Part shown: in pieces, positions 745 through 54,131 of the stretch | Numbering within the stretch: position 1 is the stretch's first letter | How the letters are laid out: every line of letters begins with the position of its first letter | Sequence record: NC_070650.1 | Reading direction: 5' to 3' (one strand) | Length of the DNA stretch: 64,000 bases | Position numbers and translations under genes: made by a program | The notes under the pieces: generated by a model | Database searches by the model: none | What the model was told of the DNA's origin: nothing | Seen by the model: only the letters and a program-made list of their open reading frames with translations

Positions 745-796
745 ACGGCATAGGAGGAGGCGAAAGCCTCCTCCAGTTATGCTGTCTTTTTATTTT
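745..796. repeat. 52-bp repeat copy 1 / bidirectional terminator hairpin
   Basis: ACGGCATA-GGAGGAGGC-GAAA-GCCTCCTCC-AGTTATGCTGTCTTTTTATTTT; identical to 26113..26164 and 50/52 identical to 9278..9329; lies between convergent genes. Confidence 0.95.
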
Positions 797-1410
797 TTGC
801 GTTTAAACGCATAGGTGCCAATACCGTCGCGACCCAAATCAGTTTCAATGGTATTATACTCCACCAAATCAAAACCTTCGCCACCCATAAACCGAATAAG
901 GCCGGCATGAGTGAAATACCAGATATGTTCATCTTTGCGGTAATGGATGGATCTGGTGATGTGTTCTGCATCAGTAAAAATAGGGATGGATACGAATACC
1001 CAATCTGTTGCCTGGGCAAGCGCAACATCAGGTTCATCGATGTGCTCTAACGCATCCCAAAAGGTCAATGCACCAATAGGGGATTGATAGAAATCGTGAA
1101 ACTTATTCTGGTCAGCTAACCAGGCAATACCTGCTGGATTAACATCAAACCCAACGGCTCCTTCGCAGTTGTCTACGAATTGACCAGCTCCGATACCCAC
1201 ATCGCACACTGGACCGGACCAGTACTTCTTAACTAAATCCACCCGGGCTTTAGTTAGGGCGTCGCCCATCGGTGTAGCTGCGCGTTCACGATAGCGTGCG
1301 AAGTATTCTGCATCATAAGGGCGTGCATCTTTGGGTACCGGGTAATGTCCGATACCCAGCTCAGGAAAGAAAGAAAGTTCGGCGTTGAGTAACTCAGAGA
1401 CCTTGCGCAT
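790..1410 (-). CDS. class I SAM-dependent methyltransferase
   Basis: Motif I VCDVGIGAG, then GFDVNP and TFWDALEHI. Confidence 0.8.
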   Translation of the reverse strand: MRKVSELLNAELSFFPELGIGHYPVPKDARPYDAEYFARYRERAATPMGDALTKARVDLVKKYWSGPVCDVGIGAGQFVDNCEGAVGFDVNPAGIAWLADQNKFHDFYQSPIGALTFWDALEHIDEPDVALAQATDWVFVSIPIFTDAEHITRSIHYRKDEHIWYFTHAGLIRFMGGEGFDLVEYNTIETDLGRDGIGTYAFKRKK

Positions 1411-2284
1411 TTAACCACCCGTTAATTTTTCCAGTGACATTACTGATGTATTTGTTGCACGCATGCTTCATTTCATAACACATACAGTACTTGTCAGGAT
1501 AAACAAACAAGCAGTTGTGTAAGCTCATAATTCTCGGGTCGGTGATTTTAGTGTGATGGTTACACCCACCGTTACCACCCCCTAAGAAAATAGTGGGGCG
1601 GCGATAAGCGAAGGCGGCTTGAGATATTAAGCAAGGCCCGGTCACTACAATATCAGCACGTTCCACTAAGGCCATCAATTCCGTGATTGATAGCTCTCCT
1701 TTATGTATCTTTAAATGTGCGAATGGTTCCACATCCGGAATCCACTCTGCGCCAGGCTCTAAATCTGCCACGCTGATACAGAAATATCCCCGAGCCTGTA
1801 ATGCTTTGGAGACCTCATCGATATGTTTGTTTAACGGCCCTCTAGAAGCATTATGCCACTCTTTACGTTCGGTAGTCGGGCGTATCAGTGCAAGTTTCTT
1901 GATGTTGCCCGGAATGTATTTGTTGGGTAATTGAAAGTGAGGCATATCCAGTGCTACAGGCTCCACACCGAATTGGCGGCGACCGGCAGCGAACACAGAA
2001 CCATTCTCCAGATCTTTAATCCCATAAAAGATTTTCTTCGTGATAAGTTTCAGGTCACGGGGAACCTCTTCATATTTAACCTGCGTCCTGCTTTCATTTT
2101 TCTTTTGTGTACGCAGAGTAGTGTTCGCTCTAACAAAGTGAACATTAGGGATGTCCTGATAGAATTCTGGGATAGGAGTTTGAATCCAGACCTCATTGCC
2201 TGACATTACTAGCCGCTTAATAAATGGCCGCTGAAGTAGTTGATCGCCGATGCCCTGCATTCCATTGATTAGGTATCTTGCCAT
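1394..2284 (-). CDS. GT-B glycosyltransferase, GT9 (heptosyltransferase)-like
   Basis: N-terminal GIGDQLL motif, C-terminal LSITELMALVERADIVVT...PTIFLGG, Cys-rich tail. Confidence 0.72.
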   Translation of the reverse strand: MARYLINGMQGIGDQLLQRPFIKRLVMSGNEVWIQTPIPEFYQDIPNVHFVRANTTLRTQKKNESRTQVKYEEVPRDLKLITKKIFYGIKDLENGSVFAAGRRQFGVEPVALDMPHFQLPNKYIPGNIKKLALIRPTTERKEWHNASRGPLNKHIDEVSKALQARGYFCISVADLEPGAEWIPDVEPFAHLKIHKGELSITELMALVERADIVVTGPCLISQAAFAYRRPTIFLGGGNGGCNHHTKITDPRIMSLHNCLFVYPDKYCMCYEMKHACNKYISNVTGKINGWLNAQGL

Positions 2285-2302
2285 GGTAGTTACCCTCTAT
2301 TG

Positions 2303-2875
2303 TTATAATCGAATACTCGAGGACCATAACTCATCCTCTAATGTATTAGTTTTAAATGTTTTCAATTCCGTATATCGAGAACAGTTAATGACTGACATAG
2401 TTCCAATGATATCTGGGACTTGGTTAAAACAGCCATGCCATTTTTCGATATCGCTGTCTTTAGGATTCGAAAGGTCATCGATATGGGGTCCGTGCCAATG
2501 TAGCCCATTAGCCAGAGAACAATCATAACCCAATAACAATACTCTCTCAGCACCGAGATTGTGAGCCAAACAAATAGCGCGCATGCCTGAGTTGAATGGT
2601 CCTTTTGCGGGTATTGGCATGTACTGAATATCTGGGTAATCTTTTATTGTGGTTCTGATAGAAGTCCATTTCACCATCGTATTAGGTACCTCATCGTGAT
2701 ATTTGCGCCACCATGTTAAATCTCCGGCATAGATGTGGTCACAAGTAGGCACTTTACGCCAACTATTATTGACCGCGATAATCGGATAATTAGTTCGCAT
2801 GATGAGATGGCAGTCCTCATCAGTGAGTGATGGCCCTGAGGCTACACAAATGAACGTCTTTTTATCGAGTGGCAT
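2303..2875 (-). CDS. nucleotide-sugar transferase-like protein (Maf/MptE/sialyltransferase-like Rossmann fold)
   Basis: ICVASGPSL, IAVNN, NSG..AI.LA..LGA..VLLLGYD pattern. Confidence 0.6.
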   Translation of the reverse strand: MPLDKKTFICVASGPSLTDEDCHLIMRTNYPIIAVNNSWRKVPTCDHIYAGDLTWWRKYHDEVPNTMVKWTSIRTTIKDYPDIQYMPIPAKGPFNSGMRAICLAHNLGAERVLLLGYDCSLANGLHWHGPHIDDLSNPKDSDIEKWHGCFNQVPDIIGTMSVINCSRYTELKTFKTNTLEDELWSSSIRL

Positions 2876-2945
2876 GAGATAAGCCTTACAGTAGTGGACG
2901 TTAAAACCTATATCATTTTTCCATTAAACAAAACAAACATGGAAC

Positions 2946-2953
2946 TATATTAC
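2946..2953 (+). promoter_or_regulatory. phiKZ-type early promoter motif TATATTAC
   Basis: Exact match to the phiKZ early consensus in an AT-rich intergenic region upstream of a + run. Confidence 0.7.
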
Positions 2954-2993
2954 TGATTGGACGAATGTTGCGTATATTGGAGAGCATTTTATC

Positions 2994-4266: not shown

Positions 4267-4718
4267 GGTCTGGCATGCCAATTACCATTAACGACGGGTC
4301 GGTATTTGATGTACCCGCACAGACGGTTATTAATACCGTCAACTGTGTTGGTGTCATGGGCAAAGGACTGGCCAAGGAATGTGCTATTCGTTTTCCAGAG
4401 ATGGAATCAATCTATAAAGATAAATGCCGGCGGCGTGTGTTATCCCCAGGTAAGTTATACCTGTATACTGCCGGTACGCCGTGGATACTGAACTTCCCAA
4501 CCAAAATACATTGGCGTAACCCTTCTCAGATAGAATGGATTGAATCTGGGTTAGCGACGTTACGTAGGGTTTACCCACAAATGGGACTAACCTCGCTGAA
4601 TGTTCCGCAGTTGGGTTGTGCTAACGGTGGGTTGGCATGGCCTGAGGTAAAAGACCTAATCTATCTATATCTAGATTTGCCTGATTTGCAAGTGAACATT
4701 TGTCTAAACAACCTTTAG
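4263..4718 (+). CDS. macrodomain ADP-ribose glycohydrolase (DarG/Poa1p-like)
   Basis: INTVNCVGVMGKGLA, ILNFPTK.HW, PQLGCANGGL.W motifs. Confidence 0.9.
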   Translation: MRSGMPITINDGSVFDVPAQTVINTVNCVGVMGKGLAKECAIRFPEMESIYKDKCRRRVLSPGKLYLYTAGTPWILNFPTKIHWRNPSQIEWIESGLATLRRVYPQMGLTSLNVPQLGCANGGLAWPEVKDLIYLYLDLPDLQVNICLNNL

Positions 4719-8498: not shown

Positions 8499-9278
8499 AT
8501 GCCCGATGTGATTGCCCACCCAAATAAAGGCACTGTTGAAATCTCAGCTGACGTCTATGAAGCTTTACGTGCGTACCATCAGGGTCGGGTCTTAGTACCT
8601 GAACGCCTGACCGACTATCGTAAACAAAATGGACTTAAAGTTGGGGAATTTAGTGAAGCGATTGGCTATAGTTGTGTATCTGCGATTGAGCGGCATGGCA
8701 CTCAACCTAGTGCGCCAGTCATGGACCGATTACAGGTCGCTTACCCTAAAGCGAAATTCGTGGTAGAGCTTCCAGAACTGACGCCGTCCAAAAATCAAAA
8801 ACCGTGCATTGATGTAAATAAAGTTGTACGACACATCAAACGCAAATATCCGGACAAAAGTAGAGTCGAATTGTGCGAGATTACTGGTTTGGCGATGTCT
8901 CAGTTATTTAAAGTATTGGCTGGTTCATATCGTGATTTCAAGCCTATCACGGCCGGGCGCATGTTCCGTAGTTTAGGTGTAGTCCCAGAACGTTATTTGC
9001 TTGGGGTAGTATTACCCGAGAAAATGTCGCAGGAATATGCCGACATTCTGGAAATGGCTGCCCAGAATAAAGTCACTATATTTAGCCAATTCATGTCTAC
9101 TGTTCCAGGGGTGATGGAAGACCTCACACGTGAACTTAACTTGTCAAACCAAATCATCAGAATGTATCAGTCGGGTAAATCATTTCCACTGTTAACCAAT
9201 TACTTGTTGATTTGTGAATATTACGGATTACCGTTTTATTATTTCGAACAAGACTGGTTGGCAAACGGCGAACACTAA
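8499..9278 (+). CDS. multi-HTH (XRE-like) DNA-binding protein
   Basis: LTDYRKQNGLKVGEFSEAIGYSCVSAIERHGTQP, plus two further HTH-like segments (ELCEITGLAMSQLFKV; LNLSNQIIRMYQSGKSFP). Confidence 0.6.
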   Translation: MPDVIAHPNKGTVEISADVYEALRAYHQGRVLVPERLTDYRKQNGLKVGEFSEAIGYSCVSAIERHGTQPSAPVMDRLQVAYPKAKFVVELPELTPSKNQKPCIDVNKVVRHIKRKYPDKSRVELCEITGLAMSQLFKVLAGSYRDFKPITAGRMFRSLGVVPERYLLGVVLPEKMSQEYADILEMAAQNKVTIFSQFMSTVPGVMEDLTRELNLSNQIIRMYQSGKSFPLLTNYLLICEYYGLPFYYFEQDWLANGEH

Positions 9279-9329
9279 CGGCATAGGAGGAGGCGTAAGC
9301 CTCCTCCAGTTATGTTGTCTTTTTATTTT
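9278..9329. repeat. 52-bp repeat copy 2 / bidirectional terminator
   Basis: Differs from copies 1 and 3 only at loop GTAA and TATGTTG. Confidence 0.95.
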
Positions 9330-10135
9330 GGGAAAAAACCAATTACTTCCCGGACTTTTTCCCTGGACTTGGCCCCGATGCTACGCTGTACCTGAATCAC
9401 CTCAAATTCCATGCCTTTGTATACCTCACGCGTCCCAACGGTATCAGACCCCGATACAATGACTTTATGGCCATCATTGGACAATTGACGCATGCAGGAC
9501 ATAAGTTGTTCATGGTCTCTAAAAGAGAACCCACTAGATTCATAGTTCGTGAAATTGGAAGTAGGATTCCACGGGACGTAAGGCGGGTCACAATAAATAG
9601 TACTTTCCTGAGGGAATGTCTGTTTGGTCAAAATAGAATCAAACGTACCACATAAAAACCGGGTATCGGTTCTACGGATTTTCTCGTGCATTTCCAGAAC
9701 AGCGGCTTTGGGGTAGAGTGGTTTAGTTCTACGACCGAATGGAACGTTGATTTCATTTTTGCGATTGTATCTACACAGCCCATTAAACCCATGGCGGTTT
9801 AAGTACATGAACATGGCAGACTGAATCACCCGGTCTTCGGTACGGGCATTGAACTTATCTTTAGTTTCCAGATAGGTGTCAAGGTTATTACCGGTGGCAA
9901 ATAAAGGTTCGGCGCACGCCAGTAAGTCATGCGGGTTCTCGTCGACAGTTTCATAGAAAGTGATTAAATCTTTATTGATGTCGGCTAGAATATAACTTGG
10001 ATAATCCGTATTAAGAAATACCGCGGCACTCCCGACAAAGGGTTCTACCAGACAGGACACCTCACCAAAGTGGGGTTTTAATGCATAGACTATTTTACTT
10101 TTACCGCCGGGCCATAATAACGGAGCTGTTTTCAT
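9323..10135 (-). CDS. dam: DNA adenine methyltransferase, Dam (D12 class)
   Basis: WPGGK, VEPFVGSAAV, YLNRHGFNGLCRYN, IYCDPPY motifs. Confidence 0.95.
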   Translation of the reverse strand: MKTAPLLWPGGKSKIVYALKPHFGEVSCLVEPFVGSAAVFLNTDYPSYILADINKDLITFYETVDENPHDLLACAEPLFATGNNLDTYLETKDKFNARTEDRVIQSAMFMYLNRHGFNGLCRYNRKNEINVPFGRRTKPLYPKAAVLEMHEKIRRTDTRFLCGTFDSILTKQTFPQESTIYCDPPYVPWNPTSNFTNYESSGFSFRDHEQLMSCMRQLSNDGHKVIVSGSDTVGTREVYKGMEFEVIQVQRSIGAKSREKVREVIGFFPK

Positions 10136-25624: not shown

Positions 25625-26113
25625 ATGTCACTCATCATAAAACGAACCGAACACACTAAGTTGGTGGATTCTTTAAGGCTCCACCACACTAGGGCAAAAA
25701 TGGCGTTAAACGCCAACTCTCATTACACTTGGGAAGCACGGCGCCATAACCTGAGAGATATCATCACAATCTGTTTTCAGGCAGGCGATAGAAAGGTACG
25801 GATTGTCGACACCAATCTATCGATTGATACTCTCACGCCTTGGCCTGGATTTTATGAGTTGCCGGCCCTTTCTTTGGGTGTAGTCAAGGACGAAGAGTAT
25901 TACAACGGTTGGAACATAGCTGACCGATTGAGTGTTTTGTTGAATGTTCCGCTCCCCGGTCCAAGTGGTGGTGAGTACGCATTCAATGATACTCAATACC
26001 CCTACCTATTGACCCCGCGGGATGACTATACCGAACTCTGCATCACCGGTGCAATTGAATGCGCCAATGGAGATATCGGCATATATTTGCGGGATTTCCC
26101 ATATTCCCCGTAA
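25625..26113 (+). CDS. hypothetical protein
   Basis: 162-aa ORF whose stop overlaps repeat copy 3. Confidence 0.7.
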   Translation: MSLIIKRTEHTKLVDSLRLHHTRAKMALNANSHYTWEARRHNLRDIITICFQAGDRKVRIVDTNLSIDTLTPWPGFYELPALSLGVVKDEEYYNGWNIADRLSVLLNVPLPGPSGGEYAFNDTQYPYLLTPRDDYTELCITGAIECANGDIGIYLRDFPYSP

Positions 26114-26164
26114 CGGCATAGGAGGAGGCGAAAGCCTCCTCCAGTTATGCTGTCTTTTTATTTT
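26113..26164. repeat. 52-bp repeat copy 3 / bidirectional terminator
   Basis: Identical to 745..796. Confidence 0.95.
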
Positions 26165-26490
26165 ACTTCAGGTAAGTCTAAAGTCTGTCCAGCAAACCGA
26201 TGGGTGCAATCACCGAGATATTGAATTTTACCGTCGGTAATAAAACTATGGCACACTTTATTAATATCTTTTGCTGGGTTATCAAATTCATCCGGATTAT
26301 CTGACGGTTCCGTCCAGGTTACCAATACGGATGGCTGGAATGTTGGTTTGTCCACATCCCCATTAAACAACCATTGCGGCTGGGTAGTTCCACCGGCGCG
26401 CACTTGGTGGCGATAACCACAACCCACACACATAAAAGTATAACCCAGCATCTTACCTGTTGCATCACAAAACTCTTTTACTTTAGCCAT
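26158..26490 (-). CDS. DUF6527-like Cys/His metal-binding protein
   Basis: FMCVGCGYRH, WLFNGDVDKPTFQPSV, CHSFITDGKIQYLGDCTH. Confidence 0.75.
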   Translation of the reverse strand: MAKVKEFCDATGKMLGYTFMCVGCGYRHQVRAGGTTQPQWLFNGDVDKPTFQPSVLVTWTEPSDNPDEFDNPAKDINKVCHSFITDGKIQYLGDCTHRFAGQTLDLPEVK

Positions 26491-27113: not shown

Positions 27114-27689
27114 ATGAAGTATGTTACTGTCGTAGGCAGTCGTGAGGTGTCCGTAGAAGAATATCTTCTAATGGTAGAATTGGGGATGTGGTTATCTTAC
27201 TATTATGGTTTTTATGCTCGTTCCGGTAAAGCCACGGGTTCAGACCAAGCCTGGCAACGTGGATTCGAAATAGGGGATGCATTGCGGGGTCGCAAAGGTC
27301 ACCACCAGATATTTTTAGGGTGGCCTTCCTTCGAATGGAAAAATGGCAAGACTAGTGACCGATACGACATCGTGCCAGAAAAAGACGCACTCTGGGAGAA
27401 AGCAACGGAAATAGCATCACGCATACATCCGGCCTGGGATAAAGTTAAACCAGGAGGGAGGCTGCAGCATACTCGCAATGTATACCAGCAGTTGGGCCCC
27501 GAATTAAATAGCCCGTCTGAATTGTGTCTGTATTGTGCTGATGATGATAAGCACGGCGTCCCAAAAGGGGGTACCAGGACGGCAGTGATGTTGGCCCGTG
27601 AATATGGCATTCCTCTTTTAAATATCCGAGGTAAAACGCTCGATGAAGCAAAAGAGTGGGTATACAAACATCTTCTTTCAAACGCGTGA
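27114..27689 (+). CDS. DprA/Smf-like (SLOG superfamily) protein
   Basis: VTVVGSR, RSGKATGSD, GGTRTAV..AREYGIP motifs. Confidence 0.75.
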   Translation: MKYVTVVGSREVSVEEYLLMVELGMWLSYYYGFYARSGKATGSDQAWQRGFEIGDALRGRKGHHQIFLGWPSFEWKNGKTSDRYDIVPEKDALWEKATEIASRIHPAWDKVKPGGRLQHTRNVYQQLGPELNSPSELCLYCADDDKHGVPKGGTRTAVMLAREYGIPLLNIRGKTLDEAKEWVYKHLLSNA

Positions 27690-27694
27690 AAACC

Positions 27695-27738
27695 ATCAAA
27701 TAAAATAATTATAAACCTATATCACTTGGATGAATAGG
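27695..27738 (+). promoter_or_regulatory. 44-bp duplicated promoter element (TATATCAC core), copy 1
   Basis: Identical to 34377..34420; AT-rich, upstream of a + run. Confidence 0.75.
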
Positions 27739-27766
27739 TACCTTACTTTACTTTGAGGAGAGCATT

Positions 27767-34311: not shown

Positions 34312-34376
34312 CGGGTGCTCCTTTTATCCGCAATAAATTAAAATAGATTCAAATCATAATCGTTTTTATAAAAACT

Positions 34377-34420
34377 ATCAAATAAAATAATTATAAACCT
34401 ATATCACTTGGATGAATAGG
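34377..34420 (+). promoter_or_regulatory. 44-bp duplicated promoter element, copy 2
   Basis: Identical to 27695..27738. Confidence 0.75.
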
Positions 34421-34456
34421 GACCACTAGACCATCTAACTTCCAGGAGTAATTACC

Positions 34457-42293: not shown

Positions 42294-43265
42294 ATGACTG
42301 ACCGCACTCTTTCTTTATACGGCGCCGGTGGCGCTGGCAGTAATCAGGTTAAACCATTTATTGGTGTAAGTACTCTCCCAGGCTATGCTAAAATGGCCTG
42401 TACGCTTATCGACACCAGTGATAGCAACATCACCGATGGCGTACCGGAAGAGAACGTATTTATCCTGGACGGCGTGGATGGTTCCGGTAAAGTCCGCGCC
42501 CAGAACTATGAGGTCATCCTCAACACTACCCGTCAAATTCTTCTTCAACATCCCTTCGGTGACGTCGCGGTCATCGTGTTTTCTGCAAGCGGCGGTTCCG
42601 GTTCGGTGTTCGCCCCGATCATCATGCAGGAAGCTATCGCCAAAGGCGTGCCGATCATCGGTATCGTTATTGGTACCCACGGCACCGCTAAAGAAGCGGA
42701 AAACACAGTTAATACACTGAAGTCCATGGACAACATGGCACGTAAGAACGGCGTCCCGTTTGTTATCATCTATGAACGCAACCGTCGCGATTACGGCCGC
42801 AAAAAGGTGGACGAAGCAATCCGCGCAGCCATCCTGCAAATTTCACTGCTGGTTGGTACCATGAACAACAACTCCGGCCTGGACAGCGCCGACATCAAAA
42901 ACTGGGTCTATTTCCAGTCGGTGACGGATGTTCCACCACAATTGGCTTTGCTGGATATTATCCTTAATGAAGAATGTTCTAAGGATATCAGTGATCCTAT
43001 TTCGGTGGCCAGCATCTATGAAGAAGGGCACGATGCTGAGTTTCCTTTTGCTTCTGACTACGGTTGCGAAGGGTTTAAAGCCAGTGGAATTGCCCCGGAA
43101 CATAAAGAAGTTCATTTCGTCATTTCTATCAGTGATGTGCCTCAGCTCTTCAGTATGGAAAAAGAGCAGGTCGACCGGTATCGTGAGGTTAAAAACTCAC
43201 GAGTAGTCCAATCGTCCCTCGTGGATAAAAACGACAAAACTACCGACGACGGCATGGTTCTTTAA
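42294..43265 (+). CDS. phuZ: PhuZ/TubZ phage tubulin
   Basis: YGAGGAGSN, IDTSDSN, GSGK.R, tubulin signature SASGGSGS, LDSADI, acidic C-tail DDGMVL. Confidence 0.96.
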   Translation: MTDRTLSLYGAGGAGSNQVKPFIGVSTLPGYAKMACTLIDTSDSNITDGVPEENVFILDGVDGSGKVRAQNYEVILNTTRQILLQHPFGDVAVIVFSASGGSGSVFAPIIMQEAIAKGVPIIGIVIGTHGTAKEAENTVNTLKSMDNMARKNGVPFVIIYERNRRDYGRKKVDEAIRAAILQISLLVGTMNNNSGLDSADIKNWVYFQSVTDVPPQLALLDIILNEECSKDISDPISVASIYEEGHDAEFPFASDYGCEGFKASGIAPEHKEVHFVISISDVPQLFSMEKEQVDRYREVKNSRVVQSSLVDKNDKTTDDGMVL

Positions 43266-52244: not shown

Positions 52245-54131
52245 ATGAGTATTAACGACGCTCGCAATCCTGGTAACAACGACGCTGCTCAAGAACGTGC
52301 TCACACTGCGGCGCCGCAGTTTGATGAGTCTCAAGTGCGCCAGGCTGCTCCGCATCGCAAAACCATTACCGGTAAAGGCGGTGTGAACGCACTCCTGTCC
52401 CGTCGTCTCAACCGCGTAGGCGGTAACGAAGACATCAGCAAAATCGCTGAAATGATGCGCGGCTATCTGCGCAGCCAACTGGATGAGGGCTATGTTCCGA
52501 CTTTCGTCATTGTTGACGGCGCTACTTACGAACTGGCGGTATCCGCCATCGTCCCGACCGTGCTGCTGACCGTGCGTGGTGTTAAAACGGTGCTGGCTTA
52601 TCCGATTCTCGTCGAGCCGCGCGATCGCTCCATGGACACTGTCCGTACCGTCCGTGAAAACAACCGCGAACTGTCTCTGCCGGTAGTGACCTCCGATTTC
52701 TACGACGCACGTACTGAAGCACAGATCCGTAACGCCATCGCTCGTCAGTTCAGCCTGAACCCGGCCGATAGCGACATCAAACTGGTCGGTTATTGCACCC
52801 TGCCGGTTGAAGTATCTTCCGACGACAAATCCGAAATCGAAGACCTGGCCGCCAACGTATTCTCGGCGCTGGAATCCTGGGTTCGTGAACAACCAGGTTC
52901 TGAAGAACCGCGTTTCAACCTGGCAGAAATCGACAATACCCAAACTCGCTTCACCGGCAAACTGGACTTCTCTCCGGCGCCGATCAAAACTCTGACTGGC
53001 CTGCCGATCCGTAACGACGTGACCATCACCACCAAAATGCGTGATATCACGGTCGACAGTCTGCACAGCCAATCCGGCGTTCTGTCCGAAGTGAGCGGTT
53101 ATGTGGACCTGATCTATGTCGACCCGCAACCCGAACAACATCCGTACACCCGCCAGATGTATCTGAACCCGGCGTGCTACCTCCCGAACTTCGTGATTTC
53201 CCATCAGGAAATTCTGGTTAACGCCGTGACTCCGGAACTGGTTCTGTTCGGCCTGGCATCTGCACGCCTGATGCAGCAGCCGAACAACGCATTCTACAAT
53301 GCGTTCAAACCACGCCACGGCGTCAAAAACGATACCCGTGATATCGGGGCTATCGGTTACGAGTTCGATCCGACTGGCGAAGGCAAAGGCCTCAAAGCAC
53401 CTATCGATACCGCAGACTCCACTTTCAACCTGCAGACTCTTCTGAGCACTGCATTCCGCCCGGGCATGCTGTATAGCCTGGATGTGGTAGATGGTGGTGA
53501 GTATTCCTGGGTATACGAGGCGCTGGTGTATGCTGCGAATGGCGATGCCGCCGCAGAAAACGATGTAATTCAGTATGCAGATAACCTGACCAACGGCCAT
53601 TTCCGTGCGCTGTGGAACCCGGTTGAAAACCGCGTTGCGGTAGATTCCGGCGACCTGATTCCGATCGGTTATTACATCGATCCGGAAGGCCAACGTAAAG
53701 ACCTGCGTGACATCGACTATCTGGCGCTGCTGAACATGTTCGGTGGTAGTGACATGGACCTGGTTTATCGCTGGTCTGAAACCTTCGGTAATGCAAGTCA
53801 ATCTCCGCAGCAACGTCTGGATGCACGTGTACGTATCCTGAAATCGCTGCTGAACAACAACCTGTTCATCAAACGTATCGCCCATCGCATCACCCTGACC
53901 CCGGCGTTCATCGACGTGCTGGCTACCGCTATCTCCAAAGCGGGCATCACGATCGTTCCGGAAACCGTGTTCAGCGAACAGCAGACCTATACCCGTGGGT
54001 CTACTACCCTGGCTAACTACGCGCTTACTGGCGGCCAGTCCCCGCTGTTCGCGGGTACCCAGCAGCCGTCCGTAGCCGGTTACAGTTCTGTATACCAGCC
54101 GCGTGGCGCAGGCGGCCGTTTCGGCGGTTAA
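52245..54131 (+). CDS. chmA: chimallin, phage nucleus shell protein
   Basis: 628 aa; LLSRRL, PIRNDVTIT, SGYVDLIY, GEYSW, IPIGYY...GQRKDLRDID motifs; directly upstream of nvRNAP beta'. Confidence 0.92.
   Translation: MSINDARNPGNNDAAQERAHTAAPQFDESQVRQAAPHRKTITGKGGVNALLSRRLNRVGGNEDISKIAEMMRGYLRSQLDEGYVPTFVIVDGATYELAVSAIVPTVLLTVRGVKTVLAYPILVEPRDRSMDTVRTVRENNRELSLPVVTSDFYDARTEAQIRNAIARQFSLNPADSDIKLVGYCTLPVEVSSDDKSEIEDLAANVFSALESWVREQPGSEEPRFNLAEIDNTQTRFTGKLDFSPAPIKTLTGLPIRNDVTITTKMRDITVDSLHSQSGVLSEVSGYVDLIYVDPQPEQHPYTRQMYLNPACYLPNFVISHQEILVNAVTPELVLFGLASARLMQQPNNAFYNAFKPRHGVKNDTRDIGAIGYEFDPTGEGKGLKAPIDTADSTFNLQTLLSTAFRPGMLYSLDVVDGGEYSWVYEALVYAANGDAAAENDVIQYADNLTNGHFRALWNPVENRVAVDSGDLIPIGYYIDPEGQRKDLRDIDYLALLNMFGGSDMDLVYRWSETFGNASQSPQQRLDARVRILKSLLNNNLFIKRIAHRITLTPAFIDVLATAISKAGITIVPETVFSEQQTYTRGSTTLANYALTGGQSPLFAGTQQPSVAGYSSVYQPRGAGGRFGG

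What the first reader, a model, noticed from the sequence alone, without database searches (positions are those of the whole stretch)
790..2875. Three-gene glyco-modification operon (Maf/MptE-like transferase, GT9-like glycosyltransferase, SAM methyltransferase)
Seen: a tightly packed reverse-strand operon with recognisable motifs, bounded by the 52-bp element. Established: GT9 enzymes transfer heptose to LPS, Maf-type enzymes transfer nonulosonic sugars to proteins, and virion glycosylation is known in some mycobacteriophages. Inference: a pathway that builds a methylated glycan on virion proteins, or modifies host LPS or phage DNA, which would be unexpected in a nucleus-forming jumbo phage.
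Basis: partly seen in the sequence, partly recalled or inferred. Interest (0 to 1): 0.8.

Follow-up and report, generated by a model that had tools for sequence, protein, structure and literature searches.

The report
Mobile phage two-glycosyltransferase plus methyltransferase cassette
A real three-gene enzyme cassette (two sugar-transferase-like proteins and a methyltransferase) that this nucleus-forming Klebsiella jumbo phage picked up from temperate phages; it is widespread and uncharacterised, and it most likely adds a small methylated sugar chain, though what it modifies is not settled.

Summary
The window is Klebsiella phage vB_KvM-Eowyn. The three minus-strand genes are real: gp005 at 2303-2875, gp004 at 1394-2284 and gp003 at 790-1410. 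They are tightly packed and under strong purifying selection (pN/pS 0.02-0.06).

- **gp005** is a 190-aa single-domain DUF115/MptE-like protein, the family of P1 PmgO. A family profile hits the GT42 sialyltransferase CstII (E 2e-5).
- **gp004** is a GT-B enzyme. Its closest solved structure is TibC, the protein O-heptosyltransferase, followed by WaaF and WaaC (GT9). It has an invariant CxCx4HxC knuckle.
- **gp003** is a class I SAM methyltransferase.

The same gene order recurs in 77 of 80 viral loci, including phages D3 and PAJU2. Natural fusions (gp005+gp004 types, gp004+gp003 types) tie the three together. In other phages the cassette nearly always lies in late regions: connector, baseplate or the lysis-terminase slot. 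Eowyn acquired it from enterobacterial prophages.

I found no functional study. The best reading is a methylated glycan built from host nucleotide sugars, most likely on virion protein. LPS, DNA and other acceptors are not excluded.

The 52-bp element bounds only the 3' end.

The parts
2876..2993 (.). 5' intergenic region between the cassette (leftward) and divergent gp006 (rightward). The cassette promoter must lie here but was not identified.
   Evidence: Sequence read. The only sigma-70-like match is weak. A phiKZ-early-like TATATTAC motif at 2946-2953 is on the + strand and serves gp006, not the cassette.
2303..2875 (-). gp005: 190-aa single-domain DUF115/MptE-like transferase of the PmgO family, a remote relative of GT42 sialyltransferases.
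   Evidence: - Family hits: phrog_4603 E 3.7e-52; Pfam MptE-like 30.1 bits, below the curated cutoff; 33 of 34 relatives hit PF01973.
- Structure: AF2 model pLDDT 91.6.
- Remote homology: family profile hits CstII 1ro7/1ro8/2drj at E 2-5e-5, aligning the G-P-S-L and N-S-G...L-G-x-D motifs.
- Relatives: P1 PmgO, P7 HdmB, D3 orf7 and PAJU2 ORF010.
2285..2302 (-). 18-nt spacer with a GAGGG Shine-Dalgarno-like site ahead of gp004.
   Evidence: Sequence read.
1394..2284 (-). gp004: 296-aa GT-B glycosyltransferase, GT9-like (heptosyltransferase-like), with an invariant N-terminal G-x-G-D14 and a C-terminal C267-x-C269-x4-H274-x-C276 knuckle.
   Evidence: - Family hit: phrog_6804 E 5.8e-68.
- Structure: AF2 model pLDDT 94.8. 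Foldseek ranks 1-18 and 20-21 are TibC (best E 5e-10, TMq up to 0.66), with WaaF at rank 19, then a GT9 enzyme (3tov) and WaaC.
- Sequence: family profile hits WaaF 1psw at E 4-5e-4.
- Invariant residues come from alignments A2 and A7.
790..1410 (-). gp003: 206-aa class I SAM-dependent methyltransferase. Its start overlaps the end of gp004 by 17 nt.
   Evidence: - Pfam Methyltransf_23 36.5 bits, above the cutoff of 27.
- phrog_6564 E 4.2e-78.
- Invariant D70-x-G-x-G-x-G76 and D89.
- Weak similarity to UbiG-type O-methyltransferases.
745..796 (.). 52-bp repeated hairpin element between convergent gp002 and gp003. It is a rho-independent-type terminator for the + strand and marks the 3' boundary of the cassette.
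   Evidence: Three copies in the window. The + strand RNA folds at -28.5 kcal/mol (z -7.5) and is followed by a U-tract. The minus-strand RNA folds at -23.9 kcal/mol without a U-tract. The gp003 stop codon lies inside the element.

Best explanation
The region is an intact accessory cassette acquired by horizontal transfer. It has three soluble cytoplasmic enzymes that work as one pathway.

1. **gp005.** A minimal DUF115/GT42-like transferase. It binds a nucleotide-activated sugar, probably CMP-linked. CMP-Kdo is the only such donor that, to my knowledge, all known hosts of cassette-bearing phages make.
2. **gp004.** A GT9-type GT-B enzyme closest in fold to TibC. It transfers a second sugar, most plausibly heptose from host ADP-heptose, using Asp14 as the base. 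A Cys3His knuckle sits in the same C-terminal part of the catalytic domain as TibC's iron finger.
3. **gp003.** It methylates the product with SAM.

The phage carries no recognisable nucleotide-sugar biosynthesis genes, so the donors come from the host. The acceptor is most likely one or more virion proteins made at the same time, such as tail fibre or spike, connector or capsid proteins. The product would be a short methylated O-glycan on the particle.

**Shown:** the genes, their folds, their conserved motifs, their coupling, their genomic context and their horizontal origin.

**Inferred:** the donors, the order of reactions and the acceptor.

**Sub-confidences:**
- Co-functional cassette of two glycosyltransferases and a methyltransferase: about 0.8.
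- Heptose donor for gp004: about 0.5.
- CMP-ulosonic acid donor for gp005: about 0.4.
- Virion protein as the acceptor: about 0.4.
For: **Enzyme identities**
- Supported (details in the parts list).

**Functional coupling**
- The order gp005-type, gp004-type, gp003-type on one strand recurs in 77 of 80 IMG/VR loci, and in PAJU2 ORF010-012 and loci L005 and L006.
- Natural fusions exist. The gp005 and gp004 types are fused in P0363 and P0473 and in four loci. The gp004 and gp003 types are fused in P0172. A gp005 type is fused to a TylF-like sugar O-methyltransferase in P0497.
- All three genes are under strong purifying selection.

**Late or virion-linked context in other phages**
- D3, PAJU2, Mulvp2, the contig of P0363 and a T4-like cyanophage: between head-tail connector or neck genes.
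- E217-like prophages: between Baseplate_J and the wedge and tail-fibre genes, with overlapping reading frames.
- Lambdoid prophages: between the lysis genes and terminase.

**Other pointers**
- The best structural match of gp004 is a protein-acting heptosyltransferase. TibC's metal finger recognises beta-helical substrates (PMC4358343).
- PAJU2 ORF010 was deposited as a 'structural protein'.
- None of the three has a transmembrane segment.
- No convincingly annotated nucleotide-sugar gene appears in the parts of the Eowyn genome I read. The one such label is doubtful (see evidence against).
- Phage glycosyltransferases are known to draw on the E. coli Kdo and heptose pools (bioRxiv 10.1101/2023.12.21.572611).
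Against: - No glycan, donor or acceptor has been demonstrated for any member, and I found no functional paper.
- In Eowyn itself the cassette is not in a structural module. It is a lone minus-strand island among + strand genes that carry early-type promoter motifs, so its timing there is unknown.
- The cassette moves between siphoviruses, myoviruses, lambdoid phages and a jumbo phage. That argues for a universal acceptor (host LPS, DNA or a host protein) or a very loose sequon.
- The nearest sequence-level relatives, CstII and WaaF, act on lipooligosaccharide and LPS.
- The GT9 motif that aligns to WaaF's N-D-S-G is not conserved in gp004, so ADP-heptose is not assured.
- The fold search for gp005 is weak. 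Its top hit is a pyrophosphokinase (MptE, 8sd5) at TM 0.39.
- The P1 homologue pmgO is dispensable for plaque formation, so any virion role is not essential.
- gp004 is basic (pI 9.2), which also fits an anionic lipid or nucleic-acid acceptor.
- One Eowyn gene, gp124, is labelled phosphoheptose isomerase. The label is unsupported but has not been disproved.
Confidence: 0.42

Rival explanations
1. Envelope glycolipid modification. The enzymes act at the cytoplasmic face of the inner membrane on nascent LPS or LOS core, adding an extra ulosonic acid, a heptose and a methyl group. This would change the receptor surface, to exclude other phages or to stop progeny sticking to debris.
For: - The closest sequence-level relatives of both transferases act on LOS or LPS: CstII and CstI and WaaF.
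- WaaC and WaaF are also strong fold matches.
- gp004 has a basic N-terminal domain (pI 9.7), as I would expect for binding an anionic lipid A-Kdo acceptor.
- A host acceptor would explain why the cassette works in phages of very different architecture.
Against: - In most phages the cassette sits in late operons, often translationally coupled to structural genes. New LPS made shortly before lysis would change little of the cell surface (inference).
- It is not placed like classical lysogenic-conversion genes with their own promoter.
- The best fold match is the protein-acting TibC rather than WaaC or WaaF.
- The enzymes have no membrane anchor.
Confidence: 0.2
2. DNA hypermodification. The cassette decorates phage DNA bases with a methylated glycan to evade restriction, as known phage DNA glycosyltransferases do.
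For: - Phage glycosyltransferases can put Kdo and heptose on 5hmC using E. coli metabolites.
- In some lambdoid prophages the cassette sits beside a ParB_N protein and a TET-associated glycosyltransferase, just upstream of terminase.
- gp004 is basic.
Against: - gp003 is a small-molecule or O-methyltransferase-type enzyme, not a DNA methyltransferase.
- No TET/JBP or hydroxymethylase is linked to the cassette in the loci read.
- To my knowledge, neither D3 nor P1 (which has only the gp005 type) is known to carry hypermodified DNA.
- The DNA glycosyltransferases in that study are T4 beta-GT-like or GT-A enzymes, not GT9-like or GT42-like.
- In Eowyn the DNA lies inside a protein shell, so all three enzymes would need import.
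Confidence: 0.08
3. The target is neither virion, LPS nor DNA. The cassette glycosylates and methylates a host protein or a small molecule, for example to disable a host factor or defence. Alternatively, gp005 is a pyrophosphokinase like MptE rather than a glycosyltransferase.
For: - The top PDB fold hits of gp005 are MptE HPPK (E 2.7e-4) and thiamine pyrophosphokinases, and its Pfam family is named after MptE.
- gp005-type genes occur alone in P1 and in Caulobacter and Xanthomonas jumbo phages.
- In Eowyn the neighbours are small accessory genes, including a macro-domain protein.
- The P1 homologue is non-essential.
Against: - The family profile hits GT42 sialyltransferases significantly, but finds no pyrophosphokinase at E <= 10.
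- The fold-search TM-scores to MptE are low (0.39).
- A gp005 type is fused to a TylF-like sugar O-methyltransferase, and gp005 types are fused or linked to a GT-B enzyme, both of which point to sugar chemistry.
- There is no match to known defence or counter-defence models in PADLOC, although that library does not cover anti-defence genes well.
Confidence: 0.25

Closest known systems
TibC / AAH bacterial autotransporter heptosyltransferases (BAHT family)
   Same: - TibC is the best structural match of gp004: ranks 1-18 and 20-21, E down to 5e-10, TMq 0.58-0.66.
- Both have a GT-B catalytic core.
- In both, an Asp about a dozen residues into the catalytic domain acts as base (TibC Asp110 after a 97-residue barrel; gp004 invariant Asp14).
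- Both have a Cys-rich metal motif near the C-terminal end of the C-lobe (TibC Cys339/342/358/370; gp004 C267/C269/H274/C276).
   Different: - gp004 has no N-terminal beta-barrel (296 aa, shorter than the roughly 390-residue TibC chains listed).
- The metal motif is Cys3His with different spacing, and it was not superposed on TibC's.
- No autotransporter substrate gene is linked.
- There is no sequence-level hit to TibC.
- Dodecamer formation is unknown.
LPS heptosyltransferases WaaC / WaaF (CAZy GT9, Pfam PF01075)
   Same: - WaaF is the only significant sequence-profile hit (1psw, E 4-5e-4), aligned over the nucleotide-binding C-domain including the G-E motif.
- Both are strong fold matches.
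- gp004 has an N-terminal G-D motif like WaaC Asp13 (residue number from memory).
- Some homologues pass the Pfam GT9 cutoff (P0172 at 22.9 bits).
   Different: - gp004 itself scores 12.9 bits against a cutoff of 22.
- The segment aligned to WaaF's N-D-S-G donor-contact motif is G/T-G-x-x in the phage family.
- gp004 has an extra Cys/His knuckle.
- It is encoded in phage late regions rather than in waa clusters.
GT42 sialyltransferases CstII / CstI of Campylobacter jejuni; Maf flagellin glycosyltransferases and MptE (Pfam PF01973, DUF115)
   Same: - The gp005 family profile hits CstII at E 2-5e-5 and CstI at 0.013. The G-P-S-L loop and the S-G...L-G...L-x-G-x-D motif align.
- 33 of 34 family members hit PF01973.
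- Maf 5mu5 appears only weakly (E 0.9).
- MptE is the top fold hit.
   Different: - gp005 is a bare 190-aa domain.
- The CstII lid and catalytic His188 region lies outside the alignment (His188 cited from memory).
- It has none of Maf's flanking domains.
- It is not linked to sialic, pseudaminic or legionaminic acid biosynthesis genes or to flagellin.
- No family member hits Pfam CST-I.
The same cassette in classical phages: D3 orf7 + orf12 + orf13, PAJU2 ORF010-012, and P1 PmgO / P7 HdmB (first gene only)
   Same: These are direct homologues, with 34-47% identity, and PAJU2 has the same gene order. All are uncharacterised, with names that mean only 'putative morphogenetic function'.
   Different: - In those phages the genes sit inside structural or late operons. 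In Eowyn they form an isolated minus-strand island.
- P1 lacks the GT9-like and methyltransferase genes.
- P1 pmgO is non-essential.
Virion glycosylation of mycobacteriophages (capsid and tail-tube O-glycans; recalled from memory, and cited by papers listed)
   Same: Phage-encoded glycosyltransferases placed next to structural genes decorate virion proteins using host nucleotide sugars. This is the process proposed here.
   Different: - From memory, they belong to different enzyme families, not GT9/TibC-like or GT42/DUF115-like, and I recall no dedicated methyltransferase.
- The hosts are Gram-positive-type actinobacteria.
- No glycan has been shown for the present cassette.
Phage DNA sugar hypermodification clusters (bioRxiv 10.1101/2023.12.21.572611)
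   Same: They show that phage glycosyltransferases co-opt the host Kdo and heptose donor pools and build mono- to trisaccharides.
   Different: - Those clusters carry a cytosine methyltransferase and a 5mC dioxygenase.
- Their glycosyltransferases are GT-A or T4 beta-GT-like GT-B enzymes.
- None of these features is present here.

Membership tests
CAZy GT9 / Pfam PF01075 heptosyltransferases (gp004) | GT-B fold with two Rossmann-like domains | tested here: met
   AF2 model pLDDT 94.8, pTM 0.92. The top Foldseek hits are all GT9-type enzymes, and other GT-B enzymes rank below them.
CAZy GT9 / Pfam PF01075 heptosyltransferases (gp004) | Score above the Pfam gathering threshold | tested here: not met
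   12.9 bits against 22 for gp004. A minority of homologues do pass (P0172 at 22.9 bits; precomputed PF01075 hits).
CAZy GT9 / Pfam PF01075 heptosyltransferases (gp004) | N-terminal catalytic Asp and C-domain nucleotide-binding motifs (basic-x-W, G-E) | tested here: met
   Invariant G11-x-G13-D14, R140/E142/W143 and G196-E197. The G-E region aligns to WaaF. Mapping of Asp14 onto WaaC Asp13 is by position and from memory.
CAZy GT9 / Pfam PF01075 heptosyltransferases (gp004) | D-S/T-G sugar-contact motif in the C-domain | tested here: not met
   The WaaF segment T-N-D-S-G-L-M-H aligns to g-g-v-g in the profile (T-G-P-C in gp004).
CAZy GT9 / Pfam PF01075 heptosyltransferases (gp004) | Uses ADP-heptose as donor | not testable with these tools
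   Needs an enzyme assay or a ligand-bound structure.
BAHT protein heptosyltransferases (TibC/AAH) (gp004) | Closest structural neighbour | tested here: met
   Foldseek ranks 1-18 and 20-21 are TibC chains, E 5e-10 to 3e-8.
BAHT protein heptosyltransferases (TibC/AAH) (gp004) | Four-Cys iron finger inserted in the C-lobe | tested here: inconclusive
   gp004 has an invariant C-x-C-x4-H-x-C near its C-terminus. Spacing and ligands differ from TibC Cys339/342/358/370. No superposition or metal data.
BAHT protein heptosyltransferases (TibC/AAH) (gp004) | N-terminal beta-barrel, dodecamer, and a linked autotransporter substrate gene | tested here: not met
   gp004 starts directly with the catalytic domain (strand 3-7, G-D at 13-14). 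No autotransporter is adjacent in Eowyn or in the loci read. Oligomeric state was not testable.
GT42 sialyltransferases (CstII/CstI) (gp005; the RefSeq and PHROG label) | Sequence homology over the CMP-sugar-binding Rossmann core | tested here: met
   Profile A6 hits 1ro7, 1ro8, 2drj and 2x61 at E 2-5e-5, over positions 5-133 against CstII 2-173.
GT42 sialyltransferases (CstII/CstI) (gp005; the RefSeq and PHROG label) | Catalytic His and lid region; Pfam CST-I membership | tested here: not met
   The alignment stops before CstII residue about 173. None of 34 members hits Pfam CST-I. No CstII chain is in the top 50 Foldseek hits. His188 is cited from memory.
Maf flagellin glycosyltransferases / DUF115 (PF01973) (gp005) | PF01973 domain | tested here: inconclusive
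   gp005 scores 30.1 bits, below the cutoff of 34.6. 33 of 34 relatives hit it, with best E 8.5e-9, and tandem-domain relatives pass (44.6 bits).
Maf flagellin glycosyltransferases / DUF115 (PF01973) (gp005) | Multi-domain protein of about 600 aa, linked to flagellin and nonulosonic-acid biosynthesis genes | tested here: not met
   gp005 is a single 190-aa domain. No such neighbours occur in Eowyn or in related loci. Maf 5mu5 scores only E 0.9.
MptE-type pyrophosphokinases (gp005) | Closest fold; ATP-dependent pyrophosphoryl transfer | tested here: inconclusive
   8sd5 is the top PDB fold hit, but at TM 0.39. It does not appear among the sequence-profile hits at E <= 10. Activity was not testable.
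Class I SAM-dependent methyltransferases (gp003) | Pfam hit above threshold, and motif I (D-x-G-x-G-x-G) with a downstream acidic residue | tested here: met
   Methyltransf_23 at 36.5 bits against 27. D70, G72, G74, G76 and D89 are invariant.
Phage virion-glycosylation systems | A cassette-dependent glycan on a virion protein | not testable with these tools
   Only context evidence is available.

The most novel reading that the evidence does not exclude
The cassette is the first viral protein-heptosylation system. gp005 would start an O-glycan with Kdo taken from host CMP-Kdo. The TibC/WaaC-like gp004 would add heptose from ADP-heptose, as WaaC does on Kdo in LPS. gp003 would cap the glycan with a methyl group. 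The result would be an 'LPS-inner-core-like' glycan on beta-helical tail spikes or fibres, or on connector or capsid proteins. The system would be widespread in phages of Gram-negative bacteria, including D3. In Eowyn it would act in the cytoplasm, outside the phage nucleus.
Probability: 0.12. Interest if true: 0.8.

Novelty: new variant of a known kind. Interest (0 to 1): 0.55.

Why it matters
Phage-encoded glycosylation is established for DNA (T4 and relatives), for O-antigen conversion and, from memory, for mycobacteriophage virions.

This cassette combines enzyme types not described in any of those systems: a TibC/GT9-like GT-B, a minimal GT42/DUF115-like transferase and a dedicated methyltransferase.

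It is also very common. More than 570 viral contigs carry the GT9-like gene, and more than 6,000 sequence clusters at 50% identity match the DUF115-like family. It has sat unrecognised in textbook phages (D3, and partly P1) under names such as 'putative morphogenetic function' or 'alpha-2,3-sialyltransferase'.

If it glycosylates virions, that would bear on three things:
- particle stability and receptor binding;
- antibody recognition of therapeutic Klebsiella, Pseudomonas and E. coli phages;
- whether phages tap the host ADP-heptose and CMP-Kdo pools for protein modification.

If the target is instead LPS or DNA, it would be a new conversion or anti-restriction module. Either way it is directly testable in laboratory phage-host pairs.

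Tried and rejected
- **Single-sequence PDB searches** of all three proteins gave nothing meaningful. A narrow gp005 profile (A1) also found nothing. Only the broader profile A6 reached CstII.
- **NCBIfam** gave no hits. **PADLOC** defence models gave no hits.
- **Literature searches** found no functional work. Terms tried were pmgO, virion glycosylation, heptosyltransferase with phage, DUF115 with phage, GT9 with prophage, and heptose with tail and O-glycosylation. They returned only annotation tables and the P1 essentiality screen. The PAJU2 paper behind the 'structural protein' label is not in the library.
- **Empty-site comparison.** I looked for one using the flanking genes. gp006 is confined to Eowyn-like phages, and gp002 relatives are too distant. 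This was dropped.
- **Co-transferred acceptor.** I searched with the tail-collar fibre that sits next to the cassette in a donor-like prophage. That domain is ubiquitous and uninformative.
- **'Phosphoheptose isomerase' lead.** RefSeq gives this label to gp124 elsewhere in the genome (95485-96348). It has no Pfam support, and its C-terminal half is HAD-like (PDB 2obb). I rejected it as evidence for phage heptose synthesis.
- **Ig-like fusion.** The gp005-type protein fused to Ig-like domains (P0373) sits in an IS-rich contig beside an invasin-like gene and may be a chimera. I did not use it as evidence.
- **BFVD fold search** returned only uncharacterised viral DUF115 proteins.
- **Promoter and terminator scan** found no convincing promoter for the cassette.


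Full report
**Identity of the window and of the genes**

The window is the first 64 kb of Klebsiella phage vB_KvM-Eowyn (265,389 bp, genus Eowynvirus). It matches at 100% identity, and both the GenBank and RefSeq records annotate the same genes.

- gp005 at 2303-2875 (190 aa)
- gp004 at 1394-2284 (296 aa)
- gp003 at 790-1410 (206 aa)

An 18-nt spacer with a GAGGG ribosome-binding site separates gp005 from gp004. gp004 overlaps gp003 by 17 nt.

The ORFs are real genes. PHROG profiles match at E 3.7e-52, 5.8e-68 and 4.2e-78. Against the related phages KpGz_1 and KpHz_2 all three reading frames are intact. pN/pS is 0.02-0.06 for the four gp004 and gp003 comparisons. gp005 differs from KpHz_2 by one synonymous change, and its KpGz_1 alignment was gapped and not scored.

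The phage encodes a PhuZ tubulin (42294-43265) and a nuclear-shell protein (52245-54131) inside this window. A sister phage of the same genus is described with both (PMC13757433). So 'nucleus-forming jumbo phage' is correct.

**Boundaries**

The 52-bp element sits at 745-796, between convergent gp002 and gp003, and it contains the gp003 stop codon. Two further copies lie at 9278-9329 and 26113-26164.

On the + strand the element folds into a 17-bp interrupted hairpin (-28.5 kcal/mol, z -7.5) followed by a U-tract. On the minus strand the hairpin has no U-tract. It is therefore a + strand terminator that also marks the 3' end of the cassette. No copy lies at the 5' end.

The 5' intergenic region (2876-2993) holds a TATATTAC motif on the + strand. 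That motif serves gp006, and I found no promoter for the cassette.

**gp004**

Pfam GT9 is only a whisper at 12.9 bits. A family profile, however, hits E. coli WaaF at E 4-5e-4 over the nucleotide-binding C-domain.

The AlphaFold model is confident (pLDDT 94.8). Its Foldseek ranks 1-18 and 20-21 are chains of TibC, the iron-containing protein O-heptosyltransferase that modifies autotransporter adhesins (best E 5e-10, TMq up to 0.66). WaaF is at rank 19, followed by a Veillonella GT9 enzyme and WaaC.

Invariant residues:
- G-x-G-D14 at the N-terminus. This is the position of the catalytic Asp in TibC (Asp110, after a 97-residue barrel) and in WaaC (Asp13, from memory).
- A basic-x-W motif and a G-E motif.
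- A C267-x-C269-x4-H274-x-C276 knuckle near the C-terminus.

TibC has a four-Cys iron finger inserted in the same part of its C-lobe. It is needed for assembly and for gripping the beta-helical substrate. I could not superpose the two.

The segment that aligns to WaaF's N-D-S-G motif is not conserved. gp004 is therefore a divergent GT9-type enzyme and its donor is not assured.

**gp005**

Pfam MptE-like (DUF115) scores 30.1 bits, just under the threshold, and 33 of 34 relatives hit it.

The model is good (pLDDT 91.6), but the PDB fold matches are weak. The archaeal pyrophosphokinase MptE is first (E 2.7e-4, TM 0.39), followed by thiamine pyrophosphokinases. A human GT29 sialyltransferase gives the best TM-scores, 0.44-0.45. 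BFVD returns only uncharacterised viral DUF115 proteins.

The decisive result came from a broader family profile of 65 sequences. It hits the Campylobacter GT42 sialyltransferase CstII at E 2-5e-5 and CstI at 0.013. The G-P-S-L loop and the S-G...L-G...L-x-G-x-D motif align. Maf scores only 0.9, and no pyrophosphokinase appears.

The RefSeq label 'alpha-2,3-sialyltransferase' therefore reflects real remote homology of the CMP-sugar-binding core, not a demonstrated activity. The catalytic His and lid region of CstII lies outside the alignment.

The family is huge: 6,074 clusters at 50% identity with E <= 0.001. It includes P1 PmgO, P7 HdmB, D3 orf7 and PAJU2 ORF010. P1 pmgO is dispensable for plaque formation (PMC10695390).

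**gp003**

gp003 is a class I SAM methyltransferase. Methyltransf_23 scores above threshold, the D-x-G-x-G-x-G motif is invariant, and it is faintly UbiG-like.

None of the three proteins has a transmembrane segment. gp004 is basic, with pI 9.2.

**The three act together**

The gene order gp005-type, gp004-type, gp003-type on one strand is found in 77 of 80 IMG/VR loci fetched with the gp004 profile, and at least 570 viral stretches encode a gp004 relative. The same order occurs in PAJU2 and in two prophage loci.

Natural fusions link all pairs:
- gp005 type with gp004 type: P0363 and P0473, and loci L064, L072, L077 and L082.
- gp004 type with gp003 type: P0172.
- gp005 type with a TylF-like sugar O-methyltransferase: P0497.

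Some of these fusions could be frameshift artefacts, because the genes normally overlap. Their recurrence in several contigs argues against that.

**Where the cassette sits in other phages**

- D3, PAJU2, Mulvp2, the contig of P0363 and a T4-like cyanophage: among head-tail connector or neck genes.
- E217-like enterobacterial prophages: between Baseplate_J and the wedge and tail-fibre genes, with overlapping frames.
- Lambdoid prophages: between the lysis genes and terminase, sometimes followed by a ParB_N protein and a TET-associated glycosyltransferase.

The common denominator is the late transcription unit, and often the structural module itself.

A maximum-likelihood tree nests Eowyn gp004 (support 99/90) within the clade of enterobacterial prophage copies of the baseplate-embedded type. 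Among jumbo phages in the collection, only Eowyn-like genomes carry the full cassette. The jumbo phage therefore acquired it horizontally.

In Eowyn it is a lone minus-strand island among + strand genes that carry an early-type motif. Its timing there is unknown.

**Donors**

I read the RefSeq annotation of the genome up to 257 kb. I saw no other glycosyltransferase and no convincing nucleotide-sugar gene. One 'phosphoheptose isomerase' label is unsupported.

The neighbour families listed in 25 dereplicated loci also lack such genes, though only the 25 most frequent families per flank are shown.

The donors must therefore be common host metabolites. For a GT9-type enzyme, ADP-heptose is the obvious candidate. 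For a CMP-ulosonic-acid-type enzyme, CMP-Kdo is the only donor that, to my knowledge, all known hosts make. This is inference.

Other phage glycosyltransferases are known to use the E. coli Kdo and heptose pools.

**Target**

Late-operon embedding, translational coupling to structural genes, the TibC-like fold and the deposited 'structural protein' label of PAJU2 ORF010 favour a virion protein.

Three points weigh against this. The cassette works in very different phage architectures. Its sequence-level relatives CstII and WaaF act on LOS and LPS. The P1 homologue is non-essential.

My probabilities are virion protein about 0.4, LPS about 0.2, DNA under 0.1, and other or unknown about 0.25.

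**Novelty**

The genes are already annotated, and the cassette is common. I found no functional characterisation in the searchable literature. The enzyme combination differs from every characterised phage glycosylation system.

I rate it a new variant of a known kind, of moderate interest. The jumbo-phage setting is incidental.

Noticed in passing
window 745-796, 9278-9329, 26113-26164: The 52-bp hairpin element always lies between a + strand gene and a convergent minus-strand gene or island: gp003-005, the Dam methylase gp017 (9323-10135) and gp043 (26158-26490). Each minus-strand gene ends 7 nt inside the element. This may mark a shared way of insulating, or inserting, minus-strand islands.
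   Followed up: partly
window 2946-2953, 10162, 18118, 20336, 27718, 30879, 34400, 43415, 52108, 60325: All 10 matches to TATATYAC are on the + strand, mostly just upstream of + strand genes, including the nuclear-shell gene. From memory, this resembles phiKZ early promoters. The count alone is not significant against shuffles (10 against 5.8), but the strand bias is striking. Longer promoter-like repeats lie at 27689-27742 and 34371-34424.
   Followed up: partly
window 4275-4718: gp008 is annotated as an Appr-1-p processing (macro domain) protein, a possible ADP-ribose-removing counter-defence enzyme, about 1.4 kb from the cassette on the other strand.
   Followed up: no
window 42294-43265 and 52245-54131: The PhuZ tubulin and nuclear-shell (chimallin-type) genes are inside the window, confirming the nucleus-forming lifestyle.
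   Followed up: partly
outside the window: Eowyn genome 95485-96348 (L094:37485-38345): The RefSeq label 'phosphoheptose isomerase' for gp124, in a virion-gene cluster, has no Pfam support. Residues 165-273 match PDB 2obb and carry a HAD-type D-F-D-G-T motif. The label is doubtful and the protein's function is open.
   Followed up: partly
L014:7604-9125 (also L024, L025): In lambdoid enterobacterial prophages the cassette is followed directly by a ParB_N protein and a TET-associated glycosyltransferase (Pfam TAGT, E 3e-47), then the small terminase. No TET enzyme is visible in the 12.8 kb read.
   Followed up: partly
L091:2029-5871: This is a variant cassette. A gp005-type domain is fused to Ig-like (Big_1, Big_13) domains and is followed by a GT2 glycosyltransferase and a 210-aa unknown protein. 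It lies between a holin and a lysozyme gene, in an IS-rich contig next to an invasin-like gene.
   Followed up: no
L032:5980-6902 and L050:6827-7440: In two viral loci one cassette gene is split into two ORFs: gp004 type in L032 and gp003 type in L050. These are either decaying copies or sequencing errors.
   Followed up: no
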